A stretch of 64,000 nucleotides of DNA, from assembly GCF_963676685.1 (NCBI RefSeq), contig NC_092347.1:85994001-86058000 (forward strand), read 5' to 3'. Below are positions 1 through 28,300 of the stretch, piece by piece. Position 1 is the first letter of the stretch. Each line of letters starts with the position of its first letter. Both the position numbers and the translations under genes were made by a program. The notes beneath the pieces are model-generated. The model searched no databases, was not told where the DNA came from, and worked only from the letters and a program-made list of their open reading frames with translations. Source of the stretch: Mytilus edulis. Lineage: Eukaryota.

Positions 1-86
1 AAAAATCAATAAGACATCTTGTACTTTTGAATGGATAATTATATATATAATCAATGCATATAATGCTTTGACATTGAATATTACAG

Positions 87-7300: not shown

Positions 7301-10300
7301 AAGTGTGACCACAGTTTTTAGCAGATATCGCATGCTTAGCATAGACACATACAATTTTTTTTTTAACTATCTCCAGTTGCGGATCCAGAAATGTGGGGGC
7401 CCACTGACTGACATAAGAGGGGGCCCGCTCCAGTCACGCTTCAGTGATTCCCTATATAAGCAACCAAATTTTTTCCCAAACAGGGGAGCACGGGCCCCCT
7501 GCCCCCCCTAAATCCTCCTCTGATCTCCCACAATTTAGCTACGTCGAATCCAGTTTTAAAATATTTAAAAAGAAAACTGAATTTATATTCAGAAATGGAT
7601 AATCATTAAATTCATTCTTTTCATCAAAAGTTATTTTCATTTAAAATAGATAATTGCAAAGGAGATGTACATACAATGGAGATTACCTCTAACTGTCATA
7701 ATCTGAAGGAGAACAGTTTTCCGTTCTAGCGGACAAATGTGGAACTATCTCCTAACACTTTTAAGACAATTCTAGCTTGAACAGTTCTAATCAAGAACTG
7801 ATTTGGTCATTGGTAAGTTCTACCTAGAACTGATTTACACAGTTCAACCTGGAACTGATCCTGACAGTTCCACAGCTGAAAAAATCTACGACTAGAGCAG
7901 AACTGCGACCTGATTTCGCCAAGAACGCATCACGATTGTTTTAAACATGTTTAAAGTTGGCTACTCTCAACACGATCACCAAGACCTCATCAAGACCGTA
8001 ACACGACCAAACTGCACTACGATCGTCAATATCATTATTTTTTTAGAGATCGTAGGGCGATCACGACCTATTGTGACGGAGCCCGGGTAATAATATAAAT
8101 GTTGCTGAATATTACCAAATATTAAGGATGTGCCCTGAATGCAGTTGTGACCAAACATCTAAGTTTTAATTATTTCAATACAGCACCTGTAATTACACTA
8201 AGTTGGACGTCACTTATAATACTTACAAAGCAATTTTAAAATCGTCATATTTTTTTTTGTGATAAGTATTATTATATAATAATGACAAAAATGACATCTT
8301 TTACTCACATTTAAATTATCATCACCCTGAAATAATGTGTACGAAAAAATAAACCTAGAAAAGGGGTCCTGTTCGATTGTTTAGTTTTTAACTATTTTAT
8401 TTCTTTATAGATGTACGCATTTTCGGCATTAAATAATGTCTGTAAGGAATCGAATTCGTCCAAATCATATTAATGAATAACCATTGTAAAATAATCTTAA
8501 TTATATTTGTAAGGCATGCATTTTTCTATCGGCAATGCTTAAAATTGTATCTGTATTTGGATTTTATGTTACCACAGACAGAAGACATGAATCAGGTTAA
8601 CCATAAAAAAGGTAAACTCGAATAGTACAACGCAACCAGAAAGTCTCAACATTGTGACAGAAAGACTCAACCAATACCTTTATATCTCAACCATTTTTAT
8701 TTTTTTATTTTTCTGCTCAGAGTAGGCCGCTGACAAACAAATATTTGTGCAATTTACAGATGTGGTTATCGTAAAGCCTAAAAAAACACAAATTATTGAC
8801 ATATTTTCTTGCTAAGTCATTAATATCATGGCACTTCTATCGGATTTAAAGAATGTTAACATTATAATTCGTAGGAGAAAAGTGATTGTGACTTCAATTT
8901 AAAATATTTTAAACCAAGAAGAAACATATTAGTTACAAGTATGATTTATCTATGGCATGACATTCTCCGATTTACAAAAAAAGTCGTTGATTTTCAGTAA
9001 ATCGACAAAAATTCGACATACCCTGTGTTTATTTTCAATATTTTGAACCAGAAAAGCTCAACAGGAAGTGCCAGAATACTTTTTTCCGTCTCAACCATTT
9101 GGTTGAGATTAAATGGTTTACCAGGCGTGTTATATGTAATAAAGGCTGTACAAAGTAGACACATATTTATGCTGAGCACACAGGAATATCAAATGATCTA
9201 GAACAAACCTTGATTTTTCATCAGGTAATTTAGCTGGACCACTCCAGATAGATTTATCCTCTTCTGAGTCAGGTTTTTGAGAAGTTGATTGATCAGGTGG
9301 TTTCTTAAAGGTTTCATCTAAACTGGAATCTAAAGTATAAAGTATCTGTACAGTAAATGAATCTGACTTCTTAAAAAGGTCATTGGTTAATAGGTCTTTT
9401 GATTGAGGTAAGCCATTTCAATTGATATTTTATAGTGTGTCTTTCTATGTTGTGTTGTTACACTATTGTTTCAGGCAAGTGTGAAGGTTGGTACCTATTA
9501 AAACGTTTAAACCTGCAGCATAAGTTTGCACCAGTCTTAAGTAAGGAACCTCTTGTTCAGTGGTTGTCGTTTATTTCTACTCCAGTGGCTTGAGTCCAGC
9601 CAGAAATGAAAATAACAATTTTGGTGTATACAACCTCTGCAGCATATATTATATGACTCATGCACTTGAGAGGTCCAAGATATTGTCTATGTGTTAATGA
9701 TGGACCATAAAAACAAAGCTTTTAACCAAAGGATAAAGATGTATAATACCTTTATCAGACTGCATTTCTTCTGTTTTTTGTTTCTTGTGCTGTGATTTGT
9801 CTTTTCTTTTTGATTTTGGAAGAATTTCTTTTTTCCTGTAAATAATCAAAATTAAATTTATGCATAAGGCTTCACAAAATATGTGTGTCTTTGTTCCTTT
9901 GACATTAAAAATTTTAGAAGACAACTTCAAAATAGCAGGCATGAGAATTTAACATTTGCTTTGACGCTTTATTCACTTTGTCATGCCTCAATACATTAAT
10001 CTAGACCTATTTGTTTTCATTTTATAACATTATATTAGTATGTTTGAAATGAAACAAGTTGAACCAACACCTGAAATGGTAATCGTATGGTTTGGTAATA
10101 GAGGGTGGATTACGAAAGGTATTCACAGTTGTCTTTCACTAGATAAGTAAAATAGAATAATAATAAAGACAACAACAACCATCAACTACTGCATGGTTAT
10201 AGTTTATTCTGTTTTCTTTCAAAAAGGCAAGGTATGCATTAAATGAAATTATTTTATTCTAGTTTTGATTAAATACAATGTGATTCAAAATTGATAAAAG

Positions 10301-13300
10301 TGCATGAAAATAATTTAAAAGTACAAAAAGGTGCAACATATTAAAATGCTGTACATACCTATGATGATAATTTAGTTTGTATGAACAGTCTGGACATAGC
10401 CCTGAAAATAACAAATAAAATATGTATGTATTGAAATTGACACGAGGGCTTAGTTTAGTGACTGTGATTTAATTATCTCATTGAAGAATTCACAATGTTA
10501 TTTCATAATATCTTGAAATTACCCTGTACTGCATGTAATTGCATGAAGTATGCATTCAAAGAAATAATATATAAGCATTGGTATTTACACTTACTTTTTC
10601 AACAGATTTTTTTGCTTTTTCATAATTCTACATTTTAGATGCAATATAAAATATAAAAGTGTTTTTCAATCAATCCACTTACGTAATTTGACGAGAGCAT
10701 TTTTCTTTTCCCCATGTTCCATATACCCAAAGTTCACTTCCCAACTTCTTAATCCTTCTGTTTCTTTACATTTCTTATTGCCACATGAAAACTGGCCTGT
10801 GAGAAATAGGAACTCTTTTTTTTATTAACATAGCAACAAAATAAATGAATGAGAGCTTCTACATACTTGTATACTAAAAGGTTACATGTATATATTGCTT
10901 CATATTTTTTTATTATAAGTGGCTTAGAAAGCCATATATAATTATGGTGAAGAACAAGCTGACAAACTTTATAGCAACGTCATAAGCAATGTTTAACAAT
11001 TAAAATGTAAATAAATGTTTGAGAATGGCAACACTGATAATAGAAGCAGTACACTGACTTAGGCACTGATCTACCTAAACATATGATAATATTAAATAAA
11101 AATTTGACATACACTTATATTTAAGAATAAAGAATAAATCATTTAAGTCAGTGTCACTATAAAAGCCATCAAATGAAATTGTGACCTCTTTGCAAGTACC
11201 AAGACTCATAAGATGTAATGACACACTTCTAAAACTTCCATTAGTGTTTTAAAGATCCTGCGCTCGTGGTCATAAAAGTTTACTTGGTACTCAGAGTACA
11301 AAATATGTGCTAAAAAAACCATATCTAAGTATTTTGATAAGTTGATTTCTGGGTCTGGGTCTGAGTCTGATAATCTTAATTGAAAGTTTTTTGATTGCAA
11401 AGTACTTTCATTCTCCAGTAATTATGGTTTTATTAGTATTTACTTGCATGTACATGAACTTTGGATTTTTCGTCTGGTTTTTGTTTTACATTGTTGTAGC
11501 CTCATTAACTAACAAAAGTGTATTAATTATCCCCCTTTAATCCTATGTAGTGTATGACAATAAAATATATTACCGTTTCCATCCACAACCTCCTTTTCAA
11601 TTCTCCATCTCATTGCAATCTACAGATACAGTAATTTTGTGTAATTAACAGAAGATAAACAGTTTCATTTGTTGACAACTAAGTTTATTTTAATTGAAAA
11701 CTGTTCACATTAAAACTATCCTCAATATATAAAAATTAAAAATGCACAATCAACTAAAAAAAAGTGTTATAAAATAAATAATAAATTAATATCAATCAAT
11801 AAATAAAAAGAGATATATGACAAAAGATCAATGAAACAACAATTTATTAACACAAGTTCACCAAAATAACAATCTAATTGAAATTAAATCTCTCACTCGC
11901 TAATTTTTTTATTCTTGGTCGCTGCGTGGGAGATCTAACAACATCCCATTTGACAGGGCGTCAGAGCTCAAAATCGATTGTCCAATCAAAACAGTGCTCC
12001 CAAAATCTTCACTGTGAAGTAGACTGGCACAGTCAGTCGCAATTTTTATCGACTTCCGTAAAAGGGAAATAATTCATAACAACAAACTAAACAAAATGGT
12101 AGCCCCCAGTACAAATGTAACAAATGGCTTCGGGTGGATTGTCAACACCTAGACGACTTTATAGTCGATCTAACGTGTGTATTTTATGCAACTTTTCGTT
12201 TATTGTAACCGAAATTAATGAAAATGGACAAAAAATTGAGAAAAAACTGTTTCATGAAAAATATAAATTGACCACGGAAAGAGTAATCGCTATCCGAAAA
12301 GTTATCCCCGATTTTAAAACTGTTGATGACACAAACAATGGGGTGTGTAAGAAATGTTTCCGGCGGATTGAAAAGGTTAATCATTTAAGAGAAGAGGCAA
12401 AACGACACGAGGCGGACATTTTAAAGAGTTACTCAGCCGTTCAGAGTGTGTCTCACGTTTCAGACATTTCAAACAAAAGACTCCTAAGGTCTCCATCAAC
12501 GCCAGATCCATCTAAAAAGAAAAACAAACAATTTCCGTCCATAGAATTGAGGCATTTAGTGCAAATTCCAAATTTGTTTGCACATACATCTACCCAGGTT
12601 CATGATGTTAGACCTCTGTATAGCCAACCTACCAACTTGCCAGACATGTCAGAAGCAACCTTTGCACTGCCGCTTAAAATAATACCAACACAGACAAGCA
12701 TTAAAATTGGTAAGTTTACAGTAACAACATACATTTACTTACTTTCTTTTAATATGTCATGTCAGTAGTTTCATGAATTTGGGGTTCATATGAAAAAAAA
12801 AAAGGTATGGGGTTCATATGGAAAAAAAAGTATTGTTTCATTGTAGAAATAGTATGAAATTAAGGAATGTACAGCCCAGTTCTTGCTGATTCCTTGGCTA
12901 ATTTTGGCTATACATTTTTGTACTTTGGTTTGCTTCATGGTCAGTTCCATGGAACATGTTTATCAGCTCTGCAATATGTTTGTATAATTTATTGACCTTA
13001 CAAATATTTTCATCTTGAGCTTGAGCACCACTGGAGAGACATTATTTATTTATGTAAATGCACATGGCACATAAAAATTTGTAAACTGTTATGTTACAAA
13101 TAAGGCTTACATTGTACAATTCTTGGTTGAATTGTTTCATGTTTTTCATGTCAATGCTTTTATTGGTTTGCTAATCATTGATGATTGTTGCCTATTACAC
13201 CCTCTTCATTTGAACCTTGGTCATGTTGAGGGTTGTCTCATTGACAATCATACCTCAATTTCTTTTTTTTACTATTTGACAAACAAAATGTTTGTGTTAA

Positions 13301-16300
13301 CTACAAATGTATATATATATCATCATCACCAGATAATGCACCAGATTTTAAATCTGCTAAGAGATCTCTTGGGTTTTATAACCAAGAAAAAGAGAACCAG
13401 AATTCATCTCTCAAGGACGGAACTGTCAAGGTTTAACAAAAAATGTTTTGTTTTTTGTTCAGCATGTTCAGTTGATACATTTTTATGCAGCATTGTATGA
13501 TTAAGTTTTCAAATTCATTCCAAATTTCTAAATTTGTTGACCATTTAAAGGATTTTATTTTTTTTTAATCAAATAATACATTGAGATAATAATGAGTTTA
13601 ATAGCACAATGCATTTGTATACATGTATACAGATACATGTATTTATATGAAAGTATGTTTTTCTTGTAACATAAGTTTTAATCTTTATAGATCAGATCTC
13701 TGAATTCAAAATAGATCTTACCTAATCATATCATGCTGCTTTTGTTATATAATGAGAAAAAAAAGTTTCGCAACACATTTTTGACCACACAACAATAGTC
13801 TTTGAATGAAAAAATATTGAAAAGAATTTAGTTGTATCATGTATGTTTAATTGTCTACCATAAACTTCCTTTACTTAGCTAACTCGTTTCTTCTTTTTGT
13901 CAAAAAAGTGTTAACATGTTAAGTTCATGTGTGCTTTAAGCAATATGCATGTTGTGATTTCCCCTTTCGTGGGAAAAATTTGGTTGATTATATAGGGGAT
14001 CACTGAAGCATGACTGGAGCGGCCCCCCTTAGGTCAGTCAGCGCCCCCCCCCCCCCCTTTATGAAAAGTCCTGGATTCGCCATTGATATAAACAAATAGA
14101 AAATGTCCTTAAAATAGGTACCTTAAATGTTGCAAAACTTTTTTTACTCAGTATAATTTATGTTTAAATTTAAAAATTCTGTTTTTTTGCATTTAGTTTA
14201 GTCATGAATGTAGAGTTGACAGTTGTCACATGCATGACATACATGTACTGTGTATCTGAATGATGTGTAACAGTTTATTGATTCAGAAAGTAGCAATCAC
14301 AATCATCCAACAGATTAAGTGAAAGGATGTCATAGACAATCTGAGAAAGCATCACCATTTGCAATTTCAAAACATATAAACACACATGTACATTAAATCA
14401 ATATATAGGACCTGATGATTTTTTTCGCCACAATTTTTTTCTCCGCAAAATGTGAAATGGCGCCAGTGGAAACCCTTGGGCCATACATTTTCAAAATGCA
14501 TGACAATACACTTTTAGGTATATGCTTTTATATAAAAACAAAATAATTTTTTAACAATAAAAATCATATTCATAGATCTCGGCTATGATGTTTATATTGA
14601 TTCATGGATATATCTAAAATAATTTATGTTAAAATTATTTATTACTATATATTCTCCTTTAGGTATCGATATACTATCCAAGTGGAAAGAAAACTTCAGT
14701 TATAACAGCAGAAGCTTATAAAACCATTTGCAGAGCTCTCGTAAGAGGAACTGATAATGTTAATATTGACCGAACAATTGTACAAACTTTATGCAAGTCT
14801 AACCCAATGCAAGTTGTACATGGAACTGCAGGGTTAATACAAGAAGAATGCAAGATAATCTGCAAGAGAGGCACCCAAACTTTATTTCAAAAGAAAGGCT
14901 ATGATGATTTTTTCAAATTCAACTGGGACCATATGTACAATGAGTTAAAAATGATGTGCCCATCAATGCTGGCTATAATATCATCAATAGTTAGTGATAT
15001 TCCACCTAGTGTTAATACCAAGCCTTTCATGCATATAATGGTAACTGCTGCAATTGGATTACATGGACGATCACAAGAAATGTCAGCAATACAATACATG
15101 GTTGGATTTCTTTTGACTCATGGAGGCTGTACACAAAGAGTATGTTCTTCATTATTTCTTATACAAGTTAATGGTTAATGTATTCATTATTATAAGAATT
15201 GTACAATATTCACTCTCAGTTTTAGGGGCATATCATGATGTACTTGCTGCTGAACATGACATATATCCACAATTCCATCATCATTATAAAAAAAGAATCT
15301 TATATTTGGATCTGCAAAGATATATTTTTTTCTAAACACTAAGTAGCTATATCATTTGTCTAACATTCTAAAACTTTAGACATTAAAATATATAAAAACA
15401 TCTACACAAGATACAGAGGTACAATGTACATGTAGTTCAATTAAAACAATGAACAAATTACATGTTTCTACTTTGTTGGGCACTTTTAAGAAAAGTGTCT
15501 TGTTACATATAAAAGTGACTGCTAATTATTGATAATGGTTACATTATTCTTGATACAAGAACATGATGGATACATTTAGTCATCAGTTTATACATGTCTT
15601 AGATGCATATATTTGTATTTAATTATTTTAGGCATCTATGCTACCTATTAACTATAATTTATTCATTTTTTTTATAATTATAGGATATTGAAAGACTAGC
15701 GAAAATCGGAGTTTGTGTGCACCCACAGACAATTCATAATAAGTTAGCAAGCTGGCAAGACAAACTTGACTTAGAAATACTGTCTATTCGAGATTCATGG
15801 GCAAATGGTGGAACTACAAAATACCAATTAATTGGAGATAACTGGGATAAAAACATCCTCCCATCTTACCGCACTTCTGATCAGAAAACACTTTCCTTAC
15901 ACTTGTTTAACATGTATGCCATTGTAGACAGAGTTCCAGCAGAAAAAAATACAAGTGAAAGTTTCCTAGATGTGTCAGACCTTGACCTGTTAACATTCAT
16001 TCCATCTTTAACAGAACAAAAACAATTGATGCAGGAACTCACTTTTATTTTTGCAACATCTGTTATTCAGAATGTGCCTCAGATTGGACGACTTTTCAAG
16101 AAAATATATCCAGAACATTTAAACCATACCTACAGTGACTATGCTGGATTAAAGACAGCCCAGGTATTTGTAACTCCTATTATTTTAATTATTAAACAAC
16201 ATACTTCATCAAACTATATCATTTGTTAAAGTGACTTTAAAGGTCATATTTCTCTTCATCTGACTTAGACATAGGACCTCAAGATAAAAAAATACAGATA

Positions 16301-19300
16301 AAAATACCTTGTGGAGGTGGGGAAATTAACTTTTTCATTTTTTGACATATATAGACTCTTGATACATGTACATGTATTTGGCAAATGAATGTGATGTTTC
16401 ATGTACCATTGAAGATATATAATAGTTTGTATGGGTATTTTACATTTCAACCTGTACATGATTTGTTTTCAATTTGTTCATGCCATTCATTATAATATAT
16501 ATATTGTTTTCAGTATCCTCTTGGAATATATGACTGTAATGAAAACAAGACACAGGAAGTCATTCAACTTTTAAAAGAACTGTCGGACAAGTATGTGCCA
16601 TTGAAGGATGGTAAAATAGTAGAACCAGTCTTTTTTGGAGGTATGCATGTTTTATAATTCTTCTGGCACCTCCATTTCCTCAACCCTTTAAAATTGGTGC
16701 CATGATTTAGTCAATAGTGCTGAAAGTGGCATTAAACACCAACAACCAATCAACTAACTATTGACTTTTTCAGTTTCAAGGTCACATCAAATTTAACCTG
16801 TTCTTTCATCATGTCCTGAACAGTACAGTGACAATAAATTGTAAGCCAGGGATCTAAAAATTCTTATTGAAAAATTTATTTTTTTTTAAATTATTTATGA
16901 GCACATGCTTACAAATTCTACACTGGAACAATCAATATGTCTTTTCAATATGACCTACACACAACTATTTCGCAAAACAAATGATGTTGTAACTGACAAT
17001 AGGCTTTACTCTTCTCCATTACAAATGATTAAGAATATTTTATTGTAAAATCTGAAAATTAAATCAATATTTATCATTTTAAAGGAGACAGACTAACAGA
17101 TGAGCGAATACAGGGTGCTCAAAGTGCCATGGGCAATGCAGACACAGCAAAAGAAAAATTGGAAGGATTCATCTCTAAAACTGAGGATTTCCATAGGCTG
17201 ATGAATTTCTTAGAGGTAAATTACTAAAACATTCTATAAACTGGCATATATGTACATTTTGTATGTACTCCAACATGTTCAATTTTACTAATATGCTAAT
17301 CTGTAAGCATTGCTTTGGGCATTAAAATTTACTTTTCTCTGTCTACATTAAGTAAAATATTAATTTCCATTTCTGGAAAACTAGATTTGTATAAAAATAA
17401 GGAGATATGGTATGATTGCCAATGAGACAACAATCCACAAATGTTTAAATGTGGATGAAAGCAATTATAGGCAAGCATATGGCCTTCAACAATGAGATAA
17501 ACCCATACTGTATAGTAGTCTTTCCTCATGATCAATACTTTATGAAAAATCAGAAGATAAGCAGACCAGATATTTTAATGCGTACATTCAAGTATGTAAT
17601 ATTTAAAATGTATAGAATTCAAATAAGAACAATGACTACTACCCATAACTATTAACAGAATGTACCTTTACTGAAAAAAACCTATTTATTTAATTTTATG
17701 ATCGACCTATGTTTGCAGGCTATACACAAGTTGACATACAACAGTGGAAGTGGAAATGACCCATGTACAGCCTACTACTATCGAAACCTACTCAATATGA
17801 GAAATGTGAAAGGCAAAGTTAAAAACTCTTATAGGCCATATAAGCTACTGTATTATACAATTTTGGATGCTGTTTTATTGTTAATGTTTTTCACATACTT
17901 CAACTTAGCTGATTTAGACTCAGACATCCCTATTCCAGAGAACTTTGAAGACATGGACAAAATAAAACAAATTGATTGGCTTGATACAATCTGTAGAAAT
18001 ATTCTTCAGCAATTCTTTTTTGAAAATAATGAAGACATATGTCATGCTGTTAGGGAAGTTCTGTCAGATCCAGAGCATGAAGTGAATTATTGGACTGCAA
18101 ACCTTGAAGATGGACATGTGAAATGTCATTTTTGTGCAAGGACATATACTTATGTTGGCTCATTAAAGTCCCATGAAATGAAAGTACACGGTGTTCAAAT
18201 AAAAAAAGAAAAGAAAAAAGCTACTGTAAAAGATCAAGATCAGCTACAAGACTATATTTTGATGCTCTTTAAACTAACACTCCTTCATAAAAACCTTGAC
18301 ACTGCAGTTGACATGGGAGATGGTGAGAGATGTGTAAGATCAACCAAGTATGAATTGCCCATTTATAACAAAACTAACAAAGTGAAATATGTTATTGCTT
18401 CTGTACACTTAACAAGTTTAATATCAGGTGTTCTTCCTGGTGATCAGTCTCAAAGCTTGATATCAAACAGATTTGTGAATGTACAGGGTGGTAAAAATAA
18501 TAATATAGCTCTTGATGAGCATTTAGAAATGCTCAATCGTGACAGCAAGATCACTTGTACTGGACACCAAACGAAAGAAAGCATCATCAAACATTCTAAG
18601 GAATATGCTCACTTAATCAACTACATAAAGTATTTCGAGCTTATCAGCGGTACTAGAAAACGCAAGGGATTTCATCACTTGCCATCTTATTGTGAGGATG
18701 TGAGAAAAGTTGCTAAGGACTTATTGGAACACAGTGCACTTAAACATACAATCAATCGTAAATTAAAATGTAAAGACTTAAAAATTGACAGAAATCCGTT
18801 TGAAAATTGTGTGTCAGGACTGTCATCTATGATTCATCGTCATAAACCGCCAACTCCATTTCGTCGTTTACGTGACAAGCATATTTAGTAGTTGTGTGAT
18901 ACCGTGTCTTAGTGTAGTATTTTCTCACTGGCTATATATAGCTATTAAACCATGCCTTATCCTTGTCAAACTCTACATCTAGTCTCTGGTGGAACTTTTC
19001 TCATTGGCAATCAAACCAAATCATGCAAATCTTATTTCGTATAAAGATCAATTTATATATACAAGACCTTCTCACAAGCAGACATGTGCTTAAAATGTGT
19101 GAATATCAAGTTGGCTAGGAGCTCTATAAACCTCATGTTTACTATGCTTTGTTTGTCTCTAAATAAAATTTACTTGCTTAAACTTACTTCTGAGTATTCA
19201 CTATTCATGCTACATGTATTATAATTTACTGATATAATTATTGTCTTGCAAATGAATAATATGAGATCTGATGTATATGTCAACGAGACAGCAACCCAAT

Positions 19301-22300
19301 TATAACAAGAGTGGACACACTAAAATGTCTCACCTTTTCTAGTGTTCTCAATTGAATTAATGTTGATAAGTTTTTTCTACAAGCATTGATTAAATTCAAT
19401 GTTCACATGTTTAAGGTGAAATAAACAATCACAGGCTGAACAATCATTCCAAACACCAAATTCAGTTAGCCTATTGCTAAAAGTATCTTAGAAACAAACC
19501 TAATCAAAAAAATTTAACTTTGACCAATGAACCATGAAATGAGGTCAAGGTAAGATACATCTTACTATTATTCAATACACAACTATAAATAACTTATAAT
19601 ATCTGAAAAACTATCCCATTTAAAACTTAATATTGACCAACCACGAAAATTAGATCAGAGTCAAATAATACCTGCCAGACAGATGTAAACATCTTACAAT
19701 TATTCTATACACCAAATGAAGTTCTATCCCTATTGTATCTGGAAAACAGACTAAATCATATCAATGAACCATGAAATAAGGTCAAGGTCAGATGAAGCAT
19801 ACCAGACATATTTACATGTATACACATTACATTATGATTCATTCCATAGATTGTAAACCAAATAAAGTTCTTGTATTCCTAGCTTATAGTATATCAAATT
19901 AAAAAAAAAACAGCATTGACCAATGAAACAATGAAAATGAGGCGTCAGGTAGGTGATCGTTGGCAGCGTAAGCTCTCAACTTAAAAGCTTAGTGTTTCAG
20001 TAGTAGAAGACCTGGATGCTTCATACTTTGTATATAGATGTTACAAACTTTTTGTCTGTCTTATGACAAACATCCTAAACTTAAGGTCTCATTATATATC
20101 AACTTATCAAGCTGTATATTGTCCTGAGGTTGAGCCTCTCAAAATTGTTGATAAATTTAACACAAAACTTTCAACAAATTCTTCAAATGAAAATAAAACA
20201 CAAAAACTCAACATTGGCCAATGAACCATGAAACTGAGGTCAAAGGAAGACGTGTGATACCGGCTAGACAGACATTTTCAGTGGTTGTCTTTTGTTAGTG
20301 TGTTTCATATATGTTTCTCGCTTCTTGTTTTGTAAATAGATTAGACTGTTTAGATTTTCTGTTTGAATTGTGTTACACTGGTTATTTTGGGGCCCTTTAT
20401 AGCTTACTGTTCGATGTGAGCTTTTGCTCCGTGTTGAAGGCCGTACTTTGACCTATAACTGTTTTAACTTTTTATACATTGTTACTTGGATGGAGAGTTG
20501 TCTCATTGGCACTCATAAAGCATCTTCTTATTTATATGTACACCTTTTGTGCTTACAATCATTCCATATTCCACATATAGTTGACCTACTGCTAAATAGT
20601 ATTTAAGATATAACTTGAACCTTAAGCTTGAAGCGAGGTTCTGACAGACATGTATCTAGTCGTTTTAAGGTACCCATCTGAAATGCTGACATGAAGCTTG
20701 ATACAAAATTTCAGGAAGTTGCTGAGAGTGGCACAAAATTTTATGGGACAGACATATCAGTGAACTTTCTTTTGGAAAGGTGGTTTAATTACAACAGGTG
20801 CCTAGATATGAAAAGTTGCTGGCTGTCTCATTGGTAATGATAACCATTTTCCTTTTTCCATTTAGATACAACAGAAAGGCAAATGAATTTATCTGTCTCA
20901 TTGGCATTGTCACACTCATACAACTCATTTGACCAAACAGTAAATTATATGCGGTTAACTTTGGAAAAAAATGGCTTTATTTACATGATTTATTTACTAC
21001 TTTTGTCAATTCATATTCTTTTTTAATCATCACAAATGTCTAGATCTGGTAGTCCCATTAGTTCAGCTTCATACTCAGCCCAGTCATAACTTTCTGTGTT
21101 GGAATCAGATTCACTTTCACTTATATTTGATGTGTCTGTGAACATTATTTCAAGTGGTAAAGTATCACATATTCCACAACTACATTTTAAAGCACAAAGA
21201 TCACAACATGTGTGGCTGGTTTCTACACTTCTCAATTTATCCATGTCGGATTTCTTTAAGAAAGGTTGAAGTAAAGCTGTTCTGCGGCAATCTTTACTGC
21301 TGTACACTTGTTTAACGTCTACATCAACATGCCTACTGTTGTAAGAATTGTACAGAATTAGTCCCAAAGAAGGTTTACCATTTCTTCCAGCTCTACCCAT
21401 TTGTTGAATAAGATCAAGTGTGGTTTTCGGTGCACCATACAAAATAATGTTTTGGCAGTCACAGATGTCAACACCCATGCCCAGTGCTGAGGTGGCTACG
21501 ATAATTCGTAAAGAACTATCTGGCTTTTTAAGTTCCGTTAAAATCTTGTCTTTCCTTGATGTTGTACTCTCTGAATGATACATATCAATGTATCCAATAT
21601 AACTAGGGAGTTCATTTGAAATATATTTATACATTTTAGAAACGTCTATAATTGATGTACAATAAATTAATGTTTTAGGAAAATTTTCCTTCTCTTTATG
21701 CAAGCCATCTATAAGCCAGCACATAGCTATCTCCAGTTCAGTGTTAACTTTATTGACCACAATCTTAATGTTTTCCTTGTTTGGTGACATTGTAATGTCA
21801 GTCACATCTGGGCTTAGGTTTAGGGCATTCATTACACGCTTTCTTATTTTTAATGTACATGTTGCACTTAATGCGAGAACACTGGCAGTGGGACATATGG
21901 ATCTAATTTCTCCTATGTGCTGGAACCATTTTCTGAATGCTGGTTTCCCATCAATATCTTCTCCCCTGAAATACAAATTTAGATAATTTAGCAACAGATA
22001 TGTATAGTTTGTTCTTATTTCATAATGCAGTTAAAACATTGCACCAGGCTAGGGGAGGGTTTTGCAACAACAAACATGTTAACTCCATCTTATTATGTAT
22101 GTGTCTAGCTGTCCCAAGTCAGGAGCCTGTAATTCAGTGGTTGTTGTTTGCTGTTGTATATCATTATATTTTTTTTTCATTTACAAAATGTATTGTTTTG
22201 TTCTTAAACAATGTTAAATAAGGCCTATTATTGCTTTCATTGCAGTATGTTTTTGTTCATTGTTGAAGACCCATTAGTCATTAACTATGTCATTTGTTCA

Positions 22301-25300
22301 TTGTTGAAGAGTTCTTTCATTGGCAATCAAACCACATTTTCTTATTTTTATATTATAGGGTTATTGCATGAATATTGGGGAATATTGTCCCGAGTAGAAT
22401 TTTATATTGCACGAGCTTGCGAGTGCAATATATGTTCTACGAGGGACAATATTCCCCAATATTCATGCAATAACCTTATTGTATAGCAATATAATATTTG
22501 AAAGTGAAAATTGGTTTAAACTAAGATTTTGTCGTTGATGACGTCATGAATTTTGAAGATTTATTGCACTAGTGCAATATTATATTGCTATGCAATAATA
22601 AGAAATATTTTAGATATGCTTTGCATCTTTTTTGGTGAATAGCATTCAATTTAGTAATCATTTCACATTGGTAGTAGAAGCCATCTCATTTTCATGTTGC
22701 TTAATATAATTAGATGGTTGTACTTATCTTGATTAGTACATATATTGCATGTTGCAACTTAATATTTGATCCCAATTGAAATCACCCAATCAAGGGCACC
22801 TACTATGGGAACAACCACTTAACTTCAAGAGGGGGGGGGGGGGGCTATGTTTTTTGTCAGGGCCAGACATTTTTGTTCGTGGTTCGCACAAACAATTTTA
22901 TTTGATTTGTCAAAGCTATCAATCAGATTATTTTTTTTTCTAAATTTAATACCATCTGGAATCTGGATTCAGAATATTTTTTTTGTCATCTCCTTGAACA
23001 GAATATTTTTTTTCATCAAATTGGGAATCAGATTATTTTTTTAGGAAAAAAACATAGCCCCCCCCCCTTTTGCAGTTAAATGGTTGTTCCCCAATGAAAA
23101 GCAAAAATGAGAATTGATAATATTGTGCAACTTTAAACTTTATTTTGTTATTATTAGCACTATACAAATTTGTACATGAACTAAAAATTATAACATTGAA
23201 ACAGCTGATGAAGCCCACTGGTCACAATACACCTAATTAACAAGTAGATTTTTCTGTAAGATAACCAGGTTAAGAAAGATTTGTTTTCTCAATTTACCGT
23301 CATTGTAAGCTTAAGTCATGTAAGTGAACATTTTTTTGTTGATTAAAAAGCATCATTTAAATTTTCTTACCAAGTTGCAATAGTGTGAAACTCATCAATG
23401 ACAATTGTGGACACATGTAAAGTCTTTAAGACTTCTCTGCAGATAGGATCTCCAACCAGTGTCTCAGGAGATGCATAGATGATGTTTACATCCTTCATGT
23501 CCTCACTGATATCAGAACTTGAGCCTTCAACAGAAAATATTCATTATAGATACAAAAATATGTGTCCATAGGACAAGACACCATGTGCATCATTATATTT
23601 CACATTTTTTTTATTTTAGTTTCCATGTGTTTTATGCAAAATCATTCAGCCTGATGTATTTTCTCATTTGAATTGTTTTGCATTGGTCAATTAATTAATG
23701 GCCTTGTATTTAGTTTACTACATGTATGCAGTATGTGTTTGCTCATTGCTGAAGGCCATATGGTGACCTATCATTGTTAAATTCTACATCATTTGGTCTT
23801 TTGGAGAGCTGTTTAATTGGCAATCATACCACATACATGACATACATTCTTATTTTTATATTTATATAAAAAATGAATAGAATTAAGGATAAATTGGTTT
23901 AGTTACTGTATGTCAATCTAGACTAATTATAAATTAAAATCTCCACGCTTGGTCATTTTTTTTAATCTTTGTTAGTAATCTCCATGTCATGGGGTGGATA
24001 CGTAACTTCCTAAAAACGGGGATGTGCCAAAAATATCAAAGGTATTGAATTGTCTTTAATAGAGACCTAAATAGACTGTCTGTGATTTCTTATTGGTAAT
24101 AAATGTTTCATCATTGAATTAGTCCAAACTCTTTTAATACTTTGCCTGAGTTGACTTTTTAGACAAACAGAGTAGACTTATTAGCAGTCCGGGACTCCCC
24201 AAGTTGTACAATTATTCCACCCAGTGGTTTGACGGTAAATTGACCCCCTTTTTTGAGTCCAACAAAAAATTGGTATGTGCCTTTTCCCCCTACATAACAT
24301 GATTACACGGCTAGTATTAAAAGCAAAGACTTGTTGACACCGAGTCAGAATAATGTGTTTGGATATGGTTGCATTAGATAAAATAAATAGTCTCATATTC
24401 ATTATGTACAACATGTAAATTAATCCCAATTACCCTGAAATACAGGAACCACATGAGGGGTCCCAATCCATATAGAGCACTTAAATAACCCTAACCCCTA
24501 ACAACTAGTATTTATTAATTACTATTAACCCATTCTCTAAACTATATGGGCCACTAAAGTAAAAGCAGGCCAAAACATACAAATGTAGACCCCCAATAAA
24601 TAAGCAGAATCCCAAAATAGACAAGTACAAATGTACACATGTACAGGACCCCTTCCCAAATGACTGTACATTTCTAGCTGAAGCAAATTTATAGTTACCT
24701 ATATACACTGCTTTAAGATTTGGTATCTTCTGGAGTCTTTCAACCTGGTCCTTCATGATTGAAACCAGCGGGCAGCACACTATTATTTTACCAATGTCAT
24801 TAATATGCAATTCACGTTGTACAGGAATACACATTTGAAAAGGCAAGGATTTGCCGAATCCTGTTGGTAAAACGGCCAAGCAATCATCTCTCGATATCAT
24901 ACATTTCAAAATTTTCATTTGTTCTGCTTTTAACTCTTTAACTCCGAACTGAGGAAGAATTTTAATTATCGCTTCATTTATTTCACTCGAATCACTGGAC
25001 GTCGCCATTTTGTATGCCAAGCCGAACATCAGTAATAAAACGATCGCTGATTGGATTGAAAGAAATCTCGGAAACGATTTTCATTGGTCAGAAAAAGGTG
25101 GCAAATTTATTCAAATTTTGAGCTCTGACGCCCTGTCAAATGGGATGTTGTTAGATCTCCCACGCAGCGACCAAGAATAAAAAAATTAGCGAGTGAGAGA
25201 TTTAATTTCAATTAGATTGCCAAAATAACAAACATCTAGAATTCACTGTCATCTTAGATGGAAAAACATACAATTCTATAATAAAACATGCTGCATAAAT

Positions 25301-28300
25301 TATTAAAAGCAATTGTTTCCATAAAAAAGAGATACAAAGTTTGAAGCAAAATATACACAACAATCATTGTACAGACTGACAGATTGACTCTCCAAATCCA
25401 AGATATCTTCAAAAGAAAACAATAAGTTTTGATTTTGAAATTTCTTAAACATAGTTTACATATATAAAATTATCAGCCTGGATACTATGTTAATTATATA
25501 CAAAAAGCATTCCCCTGCATTAAATTTACCAATCTGATACAGGTAGACAGGCTGCTATTTCACATTCTGACTTATTAAGGTAGAAACACACAGTTAGGAG
25601 TGTAGTTTCCAATTTTGACCCTAGTGGATTTTTCAAATATGTTTTTGTACAATAAAATTTATTTTTAGACAGCTGATAACTTATCTAGCCTTCAAAGCTG
25701 GGTTATAAGAAGACAAACAGAAATCTTAATTTGAAAGAAGGCAAGTGAAAGGGAAGGTAAAATCTATGAGTATACAGGTAGGTTACATTCAGGATATTTG
25801 ATTTTGATAACATCACCTTGTTTTCCTTGTACCTGCTGAGATCTGTAATACAATACTCCTTGAACAGTTTGTCATAATACTTCTTGGCGAGTCTCTTCTC
25901 CCTGTTGATACAAAAAATATTATTGAGTCTGTGTGTCATATGAACCTTTCAGTATAATCTCAATTAATGTATAGATGCTCTGTGATGTTTTAAAGATGTC
26001 AGACAGAATAAGACCAGGATGAGGAATATCATACTTTGGGCAGATGAAGAAAATGCATTGAAACCTGTCGAAACCAAATCTTGCAAACACCAAAAAACCT
26101 GGCTTCACCAAGTATGATCTTACGCCAAGTTATATCAAATTATATGTGTTGTGAACCTGATGAATCAGATAATCTGACAAACAGAACAAATCTTAAGTCC
26201 AGAACGGGATTGGTTCAGACAGGTTTCACTGTTCTAATAATTTGTAAGATGATTTCCCACATGACAGTTAAAAAGACACTGACTCTAGCATAAAATTGAT
26301 AGCACAATCCTGTAAAACTTGAGAACCATCATATAAAATGTAGTTTAATGTAGATTCTTATATATGCACCATAATTGTCATATTTACAATGATAACATTA
26401 AGGAATATTTACTAGAATATTCAATAGTTTATGGATACACTATGTTAAATACCATGTTTCATCAGGATCATCTTCTTCATTCCATAGGAATCTGTGATGC
26501 TCTTTAATAACATCTATGTCTCTTTTATCTTTGGAACTAGAAATATATTTATCATTAAATCAAAACTCCAAATGAAATTTATGCAAATGAAAGATAGAGG
26601 GGGAAAAAAAATTCTTTTAACAAAGATGTAACCAATGTTCAAATCAAAATGATATCATAAATTTCACTTCATTTACATACAATTTTATATTCTAAAATGT
26701 AATTTGTGTTTAAATTGAGATATGACTAGGTTCAAATTTAAGTTTAAATTACATAGACATTTACCTTTGTAGCACCAAAAGCAAAATATGTTCAGAAATA
26801 ATACTTTTTGTTTAATAAGTCTTTATAATAATGAGAACACATTTGAAGTGTCATTAAGAACAACTTTGGCAAACTTTCAAGAGTTGTCTCCCCTTCTTTT
26901 AGTAAGGATGTTTTTTTAATCTTTTAGCAAAATAACGAGTTGTAAGATTTATACAATTAATGCATACCTGTCTCTTTTAAAATCTGCCTTTGATCCACTG
27001 TAGTAAAGTATGTAGTCGTTAATAAACTTCTTATGACGTGCAAACTGATTCAATGTCAAGGAAAGTAAATAATGTTCATGAATATTCAAAATTAGTCTAC
27101 ATCAAAATATTATTTTTTGGTATTTCAAGAAAAATAATTTTAACATTTATGTTATATTTTAAATGTTATTTCAAAACAGTCTTCCCATGATATCAACCAA
27201 TAGACTCATCTTCCTTTCAATTTAATCTACTAAATATGCTATGCCTTCACTTTGCATTTGTTGTTTGTAAATAAGTATGTCTTTAAACATCTTCTATTTT
27301 CATTCTATACCAACATAAAAGGATACAGCATCCATACTAAGAACATGAAATCTTTGGTTTTTCCATTCTTCTCTGAAATCAGAATAAAATGAAGTTCACA
27401 ATGCAACATTTAAAAACAAATATAGATTAATGAATATCATATCTGCACAGTGCACTTAGTCTAAAATTATTCATTCTTGAGAGAAAAAATAATATTCCTC
27501 AATTTTTGTAAATGTGGAATTTAAGACCCGAAATATGATTGATGTGATCCCATAAAACAGATAATTCTAACAGTCTTAATTTGATGACGTCTAATATATA
27601 TTATCAAATTGTGAATAAATCTCTACATTTCAATTTTCAGAGAGTAAACTACTTCTTACCAATTTCAAACAACTCACTAGCCAAAAACTAAGACATTACT
27701 TCAACTGATTTCTTTTATTATAATTTCCTTTTTGTAACAAATTATAAAAAAAAAGGTAAGCATTTTTTTCTGTTGAAATATAGCTTTGCTATGTTTACAA
27801 AATTATTTATGTAAACCAATACCAGTCATTTATAAGACATGTATTACCAAAGTAAAACTTAGTAGTCATGATTTAGCTATAGAATGTGGTCGCTATTCTG
27901 CAATTCCAAGAAGCAATAGACTATGTAGTTTTTGTAAAAATGACATTGAAGATGAGATGCATTTATTTTAAAATGTCCTACTTATCAAGGTCTTAGATCT
28001 TATTTAATAAAACCATATTATTGGAGAAAACCTTCTATGTATAAATATATATATTAATGAGTTCTAATAATCTTAGAGAATTATGTTATATGGGTAAATT
28101 TATATTTCGTGCACAAAAATTAAGATCTAACATGATGTAATATGTTTCACACATTACCTTCTGCTATCTATGTATACTTTGTGTAGTTTATATGTTGTAT
28201 GCCTATAGTTGTTATGACTTTGGTAAATAAAGATATAATATAAGATTTTCCTGAAATTGCTGTAAGCTAGGTATGGAAATATTCTACTGTGAGACTTTTG

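What the first reader, a model, noticed from the sequence alone, without database searches (positions are those of the whole stretch)
11861..25228. Intact, recently inserted 13.35-kb two-gene transposon: DDE transposase + RecQ helicase (AcademH-like)
Seen: 105/105 identical TIRs, a perfect 9-bp TSD, and two convergent multi-exon genes that splice into uninterrupted ORFs (~1022 and ~468 aa). The ORF track shows only fragments, so the unit is easy to miss or to mis-annotate as a host RecQ/BLM gene. Known: AcademH is the Academ lineage that encodes a RecQ-like SF2 helicase and makes 9-10-bp TSDs. To my knowledge it is described only computationally, and the role of the helicase is unknown. Inference: this copy is a candidate active element and a usable substrate for studying a helicase-assisted cut-and-paste system.
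Basis: partly seen in the sequence, partly recalled or inferred. Interest (0 to 1): 0.88.

Follow-up and report, generated by a model that had tools for sequence, protein, structure and literature searches.

The report
Young AcademH-type transposon in a mussel
This is a real, structurally intact 13.35-kb mobile DNA element in a Mytilus mussel genome that carries its own cutting enzyme plus a RecQ-like helicase; it belongs to an already described class (AcademH), moved very recently, and could serve to test what the helicase does.

Summary
The TIRs are 105/105 identical, the 9-bp TSD (CCAAAATAA) is perfect, and two tail-to-tail GT-AG genes are open: a 7-exon, 1022-aa DUF6589 transposase and a 3-exon, 475-aa RecQ-like helicase. 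The genome holds three more copies, 0.23-0.41% diverged. One is full-length with a different perfect 9-bp TSD. There are also about 60 TIR-bearing elements, mostly 110-180-bp MITEs. All nine examined have perfect 9-bp (one 10-bp) TSDs. DNA contigs of two other mussel labels carry the element almost unchanged. At this site they leave the flank exactly where an empty site would. RNA contigs cover only exons and stop at predicted donors. The transposase model (pLDDT 89.7) matches only DDE transposases. Across the genome, 26 of about 38 DUF6589 loci have a convergent RecQ-like helicase, down to about 25% identity, so the helicase belongs to the element. The helicase, 9-10-bp TSDs and TIRs fit AcademH; direct comparison with Repbase Academ was not possible. 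A complex prediction passed its controls (0.65 vs 0.20), suggesting direct transposase-helicase contact. The scan already found another AcademH-type copy elsewhere in this genome (s1-836132). Verdict: a new member of a known kind.

The parts
11861..11869 (.). Left target-site duplication, ccaaaataa
   Evidence: Read directly; identical to 25220-25228.
11870..11974 (+). 5' terminal inverted repeat, 105 nt, starting CAATCTAATTG
   Evidence: 100% complementary to 25115-25219. The first 30 nt occur 129 times in the genome at <=2 mismatches, against 0 for the reversed control.
12124..12709 (+). Transposase exon 1: N-terminal CxxC...CxxC zinc-finger-like region, donor GTAAGT, phase 1
   Evidence: The ORF is listed. 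It is homologous to the N-terminus of Ostrea edulis P0227. DNA similarity to the diverged C8 relatives ends at 12708.
13333..13430 (+). Transposase exon 2 (98 nt), the least supported exon
   Evidence: One of two 98-nt AG..GT open candidates that restore the phase between exon 1 (phase 1) and exon 3 (phase 0); the other is 12880-12977. Its 'SAKRSLG' resembles 'KARRSLG' at the same place in P0227. It is unchanged in all four copies.
14663..15139 (+). Transposase exon 3
   Evidence: It has a single possible acceptor. It is homologous to P0227, P0228 and P0237 from 14663. An RNA contig ends at 15139, the predicted donor, and runs on for 32 nt. The NCBI model P0223 starts at the ATG at 14807.
15684..16163 (+). 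Transposase exon 4, with the first catalytic Asp candidate (GDNWD; codon 15837-15839)
   Evidence: Junctions are. The D is nearly invariant in 36 homologues. It lies in strand beta-1 of the predicted RNase H-like core. The codon was checked.
16514..16640 (+). Transposase exon 5
   Evidence: GT-AG junctions, phase 1; 100% match to P0223.
17085..17215 (+). Transposase exon 6, with the second catalytic Asp candidate (GGDRLTDER; codon 17087-17089)
   Evidence: An RNA contig at 17092-17216 runs on for 30 nt beyond the donor.
17719..18888 (+). Transposase exon 7: helical insertion domain with a C2H2 finger, catalytic Glu candidate (LDEHLEMLNRD; codon 18526-18528) and the stop codon
   Evidence: Pfam DUF6589, 4e-20. 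E627, C496 and H514 are invariant; C493 and H509 are nearly invariant. The profile matches only C2H2 fingers in the PDB by sequence. Codons were checked.
21023..21965 (-). Helicase exon 3: RecA-like lobe 2, QxxGRxGR, the CRR...CC..C zinc motif, an acidic tail and the stop codon
   Evidence: Helicase_C, 3e-17. Best PDB matches are WRN, BLM, RecQ and RECQ1.
23371..23524 (-). Helicase exon 2, with the DEFH (DExH) box
   Evidence: tblastn of P0001; GT-AG junctions.
24699..25029 (-). Helicase exon 1, with Walker A (PTGFGKS)
   Evidence: DEAD domain, 1.8e-8.
25115..25219 (-). 3' terminal inverted repeat, 105 nt
25220..25228 (.). Right target-site duplication, ccaaaataa
22343..22583 (.). Nested abundant palindromic repeat in helicase intron 2; a passenger, not part of the machinery
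   Evidence: 57-nt inverted arms (I2). There are dozens of 96-98% identical copies across the genome. It is present in all full copies, because they align end to end.
13961..14050 (.). Nested, very abundant repeat fragment in transposase intron 2; a passenger
   Evidence: Summed word depth in DNA runs reaches about 243,000 for the 200-nt bin that holds it (over 1.7 million at one position), against about 35 for the surrounding element. It accounts for most RNA reads laid.

Best explanation
This is an autonomous cut-and-paste DNA transposon of the AcademH type in a Mytilus genome, inserted very recently at this site.

The + strand gene encodes a 1022-aa transposase. It has an N-terminal zinc-finger-like region and an RNase H-fold DDE core. 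The candidate triad is D439, D591 and E903 of the 1022-aa model. A large helical insertion domain carrying a C2H2 finger splits the core. The transposase recognises the 105-bp TIRs, excises the element and integrates it across a 9-bp staggered cut. Repair of that stagger gives the 9-bp TSD.

The - strand gene encodes a 475-aa minimal RecQ-type helicase with both RecA lobes and the Zn motif, but no RQC or HRDC domain. This helicase has been a fixed companion of this transposase lineage over deep time.

My committed mechanism is that the helicase is a transposase-bound ATP-driven accessory. I expect it to dock through the start of its second RecA lobe onto the catalytic core next to the second Asp and the C2H2 finger. 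There it would unwind or remodel DNA at the ends or the target, allowing the wide 9-10-bp stagger. Short TIR-only MITEs are moved in trans by the same proteins.

Shown: TIRs, TSDs, gene structure, multiple young copies, MITEs with 9-bp TSDs, exon-only RNA contigs, the DDE-transposase fold, RecQ motifs, and genome-wide gene pairing.

Inferred: catalysis, current activity, the physical complex (prediction only) and the helicase's step. I put about 0.4 on a transpososome-bound DNA-unwinding role, about 0.3 on donor-gap repair or replication, and about 0.15 on complex disassembly.

The confidence given is for the identity claim (a recently mobile AcademH-type two-gene transposon), not for the helicase mechanism.
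For: - **Anatomy.** TIR and TSD are confirmed. Both genes are open with canonical splice sites. No other ORF of 60 aa or more in the element, among the ten scanned, has a Pfam domain.
- **Mobility.**
  - The C6 copy is 13,399 bp, 0.23% diverged in substitutions, with a different perfect 9-bp TSD (GTTTCTTTC).
  - Two further copies lie on C11. Pairwise divergence among all copies is 0.23-0.41%.
  - Nine MITEs of 111-182 bp all have perfect TSDs, eight of 9 bp and one of 10 bp, all different.
  - There are 129 TIR ends genome-wide, against 0 for the control.
- **Insertion polymorphism.** X14 record 2 (592 nt) and X8 record 17 (587 nt) match the single-copy left flank up to 11872, then run on unlike for 318 and 150 nt. 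Position 11872 is the TSD plus 'CAA', and 'CAA' also begins the right flank.
- **Age.** Element contigs differ by 0-2 nt per 1.3-2.7 kb, while flank contigs differ by about 1.4%.
- **Transcription and splicing.** X17 RNA contigs lie only on exons. Unique intron bins have depth 0. The contigs stop at 12708, 15139 and 17216 with unlaid tails.
- **Transposase fold.** The AF2 model has pLDDT 89.7 and pTM 0.86. The 25 best structural matches are all DDE transposases, recombinases or integrases. The leading ones are:
  - P element, Z 8.2, rmsd 6.0, 364 aligned
  - ISCth4, Z 7.3
  - Hermes, Z 7.1
  - RAG1, Z 6.3
  - Transib, Z 6.2
- **Catalytic residues.** The conserved D, D and E sit on beta-1, after beta-4 and on the post-insertion helix.
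- **Helicase.** The best matches are WRN 1.6e-36, E. coli RecQ 1.6e-26 and BLM 6.6e-26. All listed hits are RecQ-family. Walker A, DEFH, SAT, QxxGRxGR and CRR..CC..C are conserved.
- **Pairing.** 26 of about 38 DUF6589 loci have a RecQ-like helicase within 13 kb in tail-to-tail orientation. Identities fall in parallel, for example 58/45, 52/50, 43/38 and 28/28 %. The two genes have consecutive locus tags in Patella caerulea. They share contig lengths in Saccostrea, Mizuhopecten, Ostrea and Pinctada.
- **Class.** AcademH makes 9-10-bp TSDs and AcademX 3-4 bp (PMC10045372). Academ is expanded in bivalves (PMC10294476).
- **Complex prediction.** ipSAE is 0.65 against a best control of 0.20.
  - The mark was reached by 51 of 78 solved complexes and 2 of 108 mismatched pairs. 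On eukaryotes it was reached by 39 of 65 solved pairs and 2 of 126 unrelated pairs.
  - The three runs agree in at least 65% of contacts, and partner pLDDT is at least 77.
Against: - No direct comparison with Repbase or Dfam Academ transposases was possible, and Kojima 2020 is not held. The superfamily label is therefore indirect.
- One full copy (C11a) has no TSD and a frameshifted transposase. Another (C11b) lacks the helicase 5' exons. Only two of the four large copies are fully open.
- A raw-read mussel RNA run (X22, about 6% of it read) shows essentially no reads on the exons. Expression is low or tissue-restricted.
- X17 is a metatranscriptome kept as contigs. The splice joints themselves were not displayed.
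- The letters of the putative empty-site contigs beyond 11872 were not shown.
- Predicted interface residues are no more conserved than the rest of either protein: 0.52 vs 0.57 and 0.57 vs 0.59.
- The complex score is the model's own confidence. 7 of 44 blindly picked neighbouring gene pairs also pass.
- The fold Z-scores (6-8) are in the range the tool calls middling.
Confidence: 0.85

Rival explanations
1. The element is structurally intact and moved recently, but it is no longer mobile in this genome. It may be silenced or dependent on a lost factor, so it is a young fossil and not an active element.
For: X22 raw RNA reads show almost nothing on the exons. Two of the four large copies are damaged. 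There are few large copies. C11 holds many degenerate fragments of related families.
Against: Two copies have both genes open. The TIRs are 105/105 identical. Copy divergence is 0.23-0.41%. Exon-only RNA contigs occur in another run. There is an apparent empty site in two other mussel labels. MITEs with exact TIR ends and perfect TSDs are present.
Confidence: 0.25
2. The element belongs to a different DDE superfamily, for example one related to Mutator/MULE, which also has long TIRs and 9-10-bp TSDs, or to an unnamed one. In that case it acquired a RecQ-like helicase independently of AcademH.
For: Long TIRs plus 9-bp TSDs also fit MULEs (my own knowledge). ISCth4, an IS256-type relative of MULEs, is among the best fold matches at Z 7.3. 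Academ reference sequences could not be compared. Only DUF6589 is hit in Pfam.
Against: There is no hit to MULE or any other named transposase Pfam family. P element and Hermes score as well or better. A helicase together with 9-10-bp TSDs is the published signature of AcademH (PMC10045372). Academ is the superfamily reported as expanded in bivalves (PMC10294476). An earlier follow-up in this scan reached the same class for a sister element (s1-836132).
Confidence: 0.08
3. A host RecQ-family gene and an unrelated domesticated DUF6589 gene happen to lie between two MITE copies. On this reading it is a composite or chance arrangement and not one transposon.
For: NCBI pipelines annotate the helicase as RecS, RecQ or WRN-like host genes. 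MITEs with the same ends are common.
Against: The whole 13.35-kb unit recurs at three other loci with different flanks and a different TSD. The tail-to-tail pairing recurs at 26 loci, down to about 25% identity. The helicase is only about 30% identical to any solved RecQ and lacks RQC and HRDC. The flanks are single-copy while the interior is multi-copy.
Confidence: 0.02

Closest known systems
AcademH lineage of the Academ superfamily (Kojima 2020, Mobile DNA 11:15; seen here only through PMC10045372 and PMC10799480)
   Same: A TIR-bounded DNA transposon encoding a DDE-type transposase plus a separate SF2 RecQ-like helicase. TSDs are 9-10 bp. Copy number is low. It is found in animals.
   Different: This is a specific Mytilus family: 105-bp TIRs, a 7-exon and a 3-exon gene tail to tail, and 13.35 kb. 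That is long compared with the 5.6-kb mean of curated bivalve Academ consensi in PMC10294476. It has an associated MITE family and apparent insertion polymorphism. Homology to the reference Academ transposases was not testable here.
AcademX lineage
   Same: Presumably the same transposase superfamily.
   Different: AcademX carries an XPG nuclease instead of a helicase and makes 3-4-bp TSDs (PMC10045372). Here no nuclease domain was found and the TSDs are 9 bp.
Cellular RecQ helicases (WRN, BLM, RECQ1, E. coli RecQ)
   Same: Two RecA lobes with Walker A, DExH, SAT, QxxGRxGR and the CRR...C..C zinc motif. The best sequence matches in the PDB are all RecQ family.
   Different: About 30% identity. 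Only 475 aa. No RQC winged-helix, HRDC or exonuclease domain. It is encoded inside a transposon, is multi-copy, and is always paired with a DUF6589 transposase.
Bacterial transposases with an ATPase partner (MuA-MuB, Tn7 TnsB-TnsC, IS21 IstA-IstB); comparison from my own knowledge
   Same: A DDE transposase works with a separately encoded ATP-dependent partner. Here a direct contact is predicted.
   Different: Those partners are AAA+ ATPases that choose or hold the target, not SF2 helicases. There is no homology, so the analogy is functional only.
Helitron and KolobokH, other helicase-encoding eukaryotic DNA transposons (PMC10799480)
   Same: They also carry a helicase as part of a DNA transposon.
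   Different: From my own knowledge, Helitrons use a Rep/Pif1-type protein, have no TIRs and make no TSD, and Kolobok makes 4-bp TTAA TSDs. Neither fits the 105-bp TIRs and 9-bp TSDs seen here.
hAT, P element and Transib/RAG1 transposases (solved structures)
   Same: An RNase H-fold DDE core interrupted by a large helical insertion domain before the catalytic Glu. These are the best structural matches.
   Different: There is no detectable sequence similarity. The TSD lengths differ. Those elements have no helicase partner.

Membership tests
AcademH (Academ superfamily) | Transposase homologous to Academ reference transposases | not testable with these tools
   No Repbase or Dfam library is on hand, and Kojima 2020 is not held. 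The only hit is Pfam DUF6589 (5e-39 for P0223). Relatives occur in bivalves, gastropods, amphioxus, Saccoglossus and cnidarians.
AcademH (Academ superfamily) | Element encodes an SF2 (RecQ-like) helicase in addition to the transposase, inside the TIRs | tested here: met
   A 475-aa helicase lies between the TIRs in every full copy. 26 of about 38 DUF6589 loci in the genome are paired with a helicase.
AcademH (Academ superfamily) | Target-site duplications of 9 or 10 bp (PMC10045372) | tested here: met
   This copy and the C6 copy have 9-bp TSDs. Of nine MITEs, eight have 9-bp and one a 10-bp TSD. All are perfect and all differ. One copy (C11a) has none.
AcademH (Academ superfamily) | Terminal inverted repeats | tested here: met
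   105/105 nt. The same ends occur on about 60 elements.
DDE/RNase H-fold transposases | RNase H-like fold with a catalytic D, D, E triad in canonical positions | tested here: met
   The AF2 model has pLDDT 89.7. The 25 best structural matches are all DDE transposases, recombinases or integrases, with Z 8.2 to 5.6. D163 and D315 are nearly invariant and E627 invariant; they lie on beta-1, after beta-4 and on the helix after the insertion domain. The spatial clustering of the three residues was not inspected.
RecQ helicase family | SF2 helicase motifs (Walker A, DExH, SAT, QxxGRxGR) plus the RecQ zinc-binding motif | tested here: met
   Motifs are present in the window copy and conserved in 27 homologues. 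All 37 PDB sequences matched at E<=1e-15 are RecQ-family helicases.
RecQ helicase family | RQC winged-helix and/or HRDC domains, as in most cellular RecQ helicases | tested here: not met
   Pfam finds only DEAD, Helicase_C, ResIII and Cas3-like_C_2 in P0001. The protein is a minimal core, so it is RecQ-like but not an orthologue of a cellular RecQ.
Mutator-like elements (considered and not adopted) | MULE-type transposase domain (Pfam MULE / Transposase_mut) | tested here: not met
   No such hit for any exon or for P0223 or P0227.

The most novel reading that the evidence does not exclude
The AcademH helicase is not a loosely associated repair factor. It is a subunit of the transpososome. Its second RecA lobe (residues about 238-299) would dock on the transposase catalytic core beside the second catalytic Asp and the C2H2 finger (P0223 residues 284-289, 324-337 and 500-512). 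ATP-driven unwinding would then set the unusually wide 9-10-bp integration stagger. This Mytilus family would be mobile today. Its two intact copies, matching MITEs and a polymorphic insertion would make it the first workable experimental system for helicase-coupled cut-and-paste transposition in eukaryotes.
Probability: 0.3. Interest if true: 0.7.

Novelty: new member of a known kind. Interest (0 to 1): 0.48.

Why it matters
In the literature I could read, AcademH is known only from sequence analysis, and nobody knows why a cut-and-paste transposase keeps a RecQ-type helicase. This Mytilus family offers a compact set of parts for testing that:

- two copies with both genes open;
- short MITEs (111-182 bp) that could serve as ready-made substrates;
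- a clean 9-bp TSD read-out;
- a concrete predicted transposase-helicase interface to mutate.

It also matters for annotation. Across bivalves these helicases are named RecS, RecQ-like or WRN-like host genes, and the transposases 'uncharacterized' or 'C2H2-type domain-containing'. That inflates host DNA-repair gene counts.

The element is nearly identical across several mussel labels while its flank differs by about 1.4%. That suggests very recent spread or introgression in the Mytilus complex.

Tried and rejected
- **Whole-element search.** It was swamped by nested abundant repeats and missed the full copies. Searching the TIR and single exons found them.
- **Kojima 2020.** It is not held under DOI or PMC id. 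Statements about AcademH come from PMC10045372 and PMC10799480.
- **Joined spliced proteins.** Exons were searched by reference. The near-identical database proteins P0223 (746 aa, from the ATG at 14807) and P0001 (475 aa) stood in for folding and complex prediction. The joined-protein search is therefore left out.
- **Direct exon 1 to 14663 splice.** Rejected. The RNA contig and the DNA conservation end at 12708/12709, where the donor is GTAAGT in phase 1. The only acceptor at 14663 is phase 0, so an intermediate exon is required.
- **The fetch from genomes allowance.** Three things went unread: the diverged C8 relatives, a candidate 8.2-kb element at C12:50003267-50011449, and the full extents of the 52-58% families.
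- **Empty-site haplotig in this assembly.** None was found; both flanks are single-copy.
- **X22 raw RNA reads.** They gave no usable expression signal.
- **Profile search against PDB sequences.** It hit only C2H2 fingers.
- **Search for fungal relatives of the transposase.** It returned only animals.
- **Interface conservation test.** Neutral; the interface is no more conserved than average.
- **Other ORFs in the element.** The ten others of 60 aa or more that were scanned have no Pfam domain, so no XPG nuclease was found.
- **Tandem repeats in the element.** None.

Full report
**Observation**

- The repeat finder returns a single outstanding inverted pair, 11870-11974 and 25115-25219. It is 105 nt long and 100% complementary.
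- The nine bases outside each arm are both ccaaaataa.
- The element proper is 13,350 bp, in an AT-rich (about 31% GC) animal genome of 1.37 Gb.
- Database proteins 96-99% identical to its exons come from Mytilus trossulus and M. galloprovincialis, so the host is a Mytilus mussel.

**Gene models**

The exons were defined in three ways:
- homology to database proteins;
- splice signals and phase arithmetic;
- RNA contigs.

*Helicase (- strand).* tblastn of P0001 ('probable ATP-dependent DNA helicase RecS [Mytilus trossulus]', 475 aa) gives three blocks.
- The junction sequences give exons 25029-24699, 23524-23371 and 21965-21023.
- Both introns are GT-AG, and the phases are 1 and 2.
- The sum is 1428 nt, or 475 aa.

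*Transposase (+ strand).* The NCBI model P0223 (746 aa) starts at the ATG at 14807. It fixes five junctions, all GT-AG.
- Oyster homologues of 928-983 aa extend the homology upstream to 14663. P0227 (983 aa) also matches the ORF at 12124, which holds a CxxC...CxxC region.
- Exon 1 ends at 12709 with donor GTAAGT in phase 1. The only acceptor compatible with the open frame at 14663 is phase 0. A small exon must therefore lie between them.
- The 98-nt candidate 13333-13430 restores the frame. This exon is the weakest part of the model.
- Each exon is open in its phase in the window copy.
- Ten other ORFs of 60 aa or more in the element were scanned and none has a Pfam domain, so there are two genes and no XPG nuclease was found.

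**What the proteins are**

*Transposase.*
- The last exon hits Pfam DUF6589 (4e-20), and P0223 as a whole scores 5e-39. No named transposase family is hit.
- An alignment of 36 homologues shows:
  - nearly invariant D163 (GDNWD) and D315 (GGDRLT) and invariant E627 (LDExLExLNRD);
  - a C2H2 finger between the second D and the E (C496 and H514 invariant, C493 and H509 nearly so).
- AlphaFold2 on that alignment gives a confident model, with pLDDT 89.7 and pTM 0.86.
- The order of secondary structure is that of an RNase H-like core: beta1 (D), beta2, beta3, alpha, beta4 (D), alpha, beta5. A long helical insertion follows, then the helix with the E.
- Foldseek's best matches are Hermes, ISCth4, P element and RAG1, all weak, with E values of 4e-3 or higher.
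- VIA-align puts only DDE transposases, recombinases or integrases in the top 25:

| Match | Z | Other |
|---|---|---|
| P element | 8.2 | rmsd 6.0, 364 aligned |
| ISCth4 | 7.3 | |
| Hermes | 7.1 | |
| RAG1 | 6.3 | |
| Transib | 6.2 | |

- The Z values are middling by the tool's own standard. The homogeneity of the list and the position of the conserved acidic residues make the DDE-transposase reading firm.
- In the 1022-aa numbering the triad is D439, D591 and E903. The codons are 15837-15839, 17087-17089 and 18526-18528.

*Helicase.*
- It has DEAD and Helicase_C domains.
- All 37 PDB sequences matched at E<=1e-15 are RecQ-family helicases: WRN 1.6e-36 at about 30% identity, E. coli RecQ 1.6e-26, BLM 6.6e-26, then RECQ1, RECQ4 and RECQ5.
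- Walker A (PTGFGKS), DEFH, SAT, QxxGRxGR and the RecQ-type CRR...CC..C zinc motif are present and conserved.
- There is no RQC or HRDC domain. It is a minimal RecQ core and not an orthologue of a cellular RecQ.

**Is it a transposon, and how young?**

A whole-element search was swamped by nested repeats. The TIR and single exons found the family. The large copies are:

| Copy | Position | Length | Substitution divergence from the window copy | TSD | Transposase | Helicase |
|---|---|---|---|---|---|---|
| C4 (window) | C4:86005870-86019219 | 13,350 bp | (reference) | CCAAAATAA, perfect 9 bp | open | open |
| C6 | C6:92005075-92018473 | 13,399 bp | 0.23% | GTTTCTTTC, perfect 9 bp | open | open |
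| C11a | C11:34654806-34668155 | 13,350 bp | 0.38% | none | 1-bp frameshift | open |
| C11b | 5' end at C11:9149953 (- strand) | 10.2 kb, 3'-truncated | 0.31% | not determined | open (3-bp deletion) | 5' exons missing |

Pairwise substitution divergence across all copies is 0.23-0.41%.

Short derivatives are also present.
- Nine short TIR-only elements (111-182 bp) all have perfect TSDs. Eight are 9 bp and one is 10 bp, and all differ.
- The first 30 nt of the TIR occur 129 times (64 forward, 65 reverse) at <=2 mismatches, against 0 for the reversed control. That makes about 60 elements, mostly MITEs, with two TIR subtypes.
- TSDs are 70% A+T, which matches the genome composition, so no target motif is evident.

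**Reads**

The stretch 11400-17399 is held at over 90% of its sampled words by DNA runs under four organism labels and at least eight studies. I laid four runs on it.

- *Element and flank divergence.* In X8 (organism C) and X14 (organism D), contigs of 1.3-2.7 kb cover the unique parts of the element with 0-2 differences. Their depth is about 2.5-3 times that of the flank. Flank contigs differ from the window by about 1.4%.
- *Empty-site-like contigs.* One flank contig in each run stops matching at 11872 and continues unlike. X14 record 2 is 592 nt and runs on for 318 nt. X8 record 17 is 587 nt and runs on for 150 nt.
  - Position 11872 is the end of the TSD plus 'CAA', and the right flank after the TSD also begins 'caa'.
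  - This is exactly the signature of an empty site.
  - So this is strong but not closed.
- *Flanks.* Both flanks are single-copy in the assembly, and no empty-site haplotig exists there.
- *RNA contigs.* Run X17 is a metatranscriptome kept as contigs.
  - It has depth only on exon bins and zero on unique intron bins.
That is the pattern expected for spliced mRNA.
  - This includes exon 1, which the NCBI model lacks.
- *Raw RNA reads.* Run X22 (about 6% read) shows essentially nothing on exons, so expression is low or restricted.

**Is the helicase part of the element?**

Yes.
- It lies inside the TIRs of every full copy.
- Across the genome I matched transposase hits to helicase hits by coordinates. 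26 of about 38 distinct DUF6589 loci have a RecQ-like helicase within 13 kb, always tail to tail.
- This holds from 100% down to about 25% transposase identity, and helicase identity falls in parallel (58/45, 52/50, 54/46, 43/38, 28/28 %).
- In Patella caerulea the two genes carry consecutive locus tags (SNE40_022131 and SNE40_022132). In Saccostrea, Mizuhopecten, Ostrea and Pinctada they share contigs of identical length.

**Comparison with what is known**

- PMC10045372, by the author who described AcademH, states that AcademH makes 9-10-bp TSDs and AcademX 3-4-bp TSDs. It links the difference to the helicase versus the nuclease.
- PMC10799480 describes AcademH as low-copy elements carrying DEAD/Helicase_C domains.
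- PMC10294476 reports a bivalve-specific Academ expansion, with 100 curated consensi of mean length 5.6 kb.
- The helicase, the TSD length and the TIRs were tested here and are met.
- Homology of the transposase to reference Academ sequences could not be tested. The original paper is not held and no TE library is on hand.
- MULE, which shares long TIRs and 9-bp TSDs, was considered and not adopted, because no MULE domain is detected.
- An earlier follow-up in this scan filed a 22-kb sister element elsewhere in this genome under the same class (s1-836132).
- I therefore file this as a new member of a known kind.

**Mechanism**

*Shown:* the ends, the 9-bp stagger, trans-mobilisable MITEs, a DDE fold, and a motif-complete RecQ core that has stayed with this transposase lineage over deep divergence.

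*Inferred:* how the helicase acts. I tested one specific idea, direct binding, with complex prediction on transposase residues 222-746 of P0223 plus the whole helicase.
- The score was ipSAE 0.65, against a best control of 0.20.
- The mark was reached by 51 of 78 solved complexes and 2 of 108 mismatched pairs. On eukaryotes it was reached by 39 of 65 solved pairs and 2 of 126 unrelated pairs.
- The three runs agree in at least 65% of contacts, and partner pLDDT is at least 77.
- The confident interface joins two parts of the transposase to helicase residues 238-299, the start of RecA lobe 2. One part is the helices flanking the second catalytic Asp (284-289, 324-337). The other is the C2H2 finger helix (500-512).
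- This supports binding but does not show it. Interface residues are no more conserved than average, and 7 of 44 blindly chosen neighbouring gene pairs also pass.

My best estimates for the helicase's role are:

| Role | Probability |
|---|---|
| Transpososome-bound motor that opens end or target DNA | about 0.4 |
| Donor-site gap repair or replication | about 0.3 |
| Disassembly of the strand-transfer complex | about 0.15 |

**Verdict**

The class is already published, so a specialist would not be surprised. The value lies in an unusually clean, apparently still mobile family with ready-made substrates and a testable interface. Interest is 0.48.

Noticed in passing
G000 contig C11, about 5-70 Mb (own-genome hits): Roughly half of the 128 RecQ-like helicase hits lie on the single chromosome-scale contig C11, as do many degenerate DUF6589 fragments. 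Most of them carry stop codons. C11 looks like a graveyard or accumulation zone for this transposon class.
   Followed up: no
window 13961-14050, 13224-13271, 16712-16742, 22343-22583, 20277-20542: The introns of both genes carry fragments of very abundant short repeats. Summed depth in DNA runs runs to the hundreds of thousands or more, against about 35 for the element. One of them is a palindromic MITE with 57-nt arms at 22343-22491. All are shared by the full copies, so they were present before the last amplification. They also dominate RNA read mapping.
   Followed up: partly
G000:C12:50003267-50011449: Two TIR ends of the G>A subtype lie in inverted orientation 8.15 kb apart. This may be a shorter autonomous or deletion-derivative member of the family.
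   Followed up: no
Protein database names: Element-borne helicases across bivalves and a limpet are annotated as 'RecS', 'RecQ-like', 'Q1-like' or 'WRN-like' host genes. The transposases are annotated as 'uncharacterized' or 'C2H2-type domain-containing'. The M. trossulus clusters hold 13-16 member sequences, which suggests more copies in that species.
   Followed up: partly
window 11400-17399 in runs X8 and X14: The element is nearly identical (0-2 differences per 1.3-2.7 kb) in DNA runs labelled as different organisms, while the adjacent single-copy flank differs by about 1.4%. This fits very recent spread or introgression within the Mytilus species complex.
   Followed up: partly
G000:C11:34654806-34668155 (copy C11a): This full-length copy has intact TIR tips but no TSD: tcttttact on the left and atgagtcac on the right. 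It also has a 1-bp insertion that frameshifts the transposase. The missing TSD is unexplained. Possible causes are recombination between copies, a flank deletion or an assembly error.
   Followed up: partly
window 56848-58523 and 59002-59228: A 39-bp minisatellite with about 43 and about 6 copies at 89-96% match. It contains GGTAAG, and another first-stage note (s1-839910) reads it as a repeated splice donor.
   Followed up: no
window 25573-25710; G000:C13:16.38-16.43 Mb: About 140 nt of the right flank match, at 84%, a long tandem array on C13 with a period of about 1.4 kb (sometimes 2.1 or 2.8 kb). The same match occurs in a smaller array on C2.
   Followed up: no
window 12124-12400 (transposase exon 1); P0176, P0274 and P0275: Amphioxus relatives of the transposase carry a weak or precomputed zf-AD (ZAD, PF07776) hit at their N-terminus. 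The mussel exon 1 has the same CxxC...CxxC spacing but no significant Pfam hit. This may be a ZAD-like end-binding or dimerisation domain.
   Followed up: no
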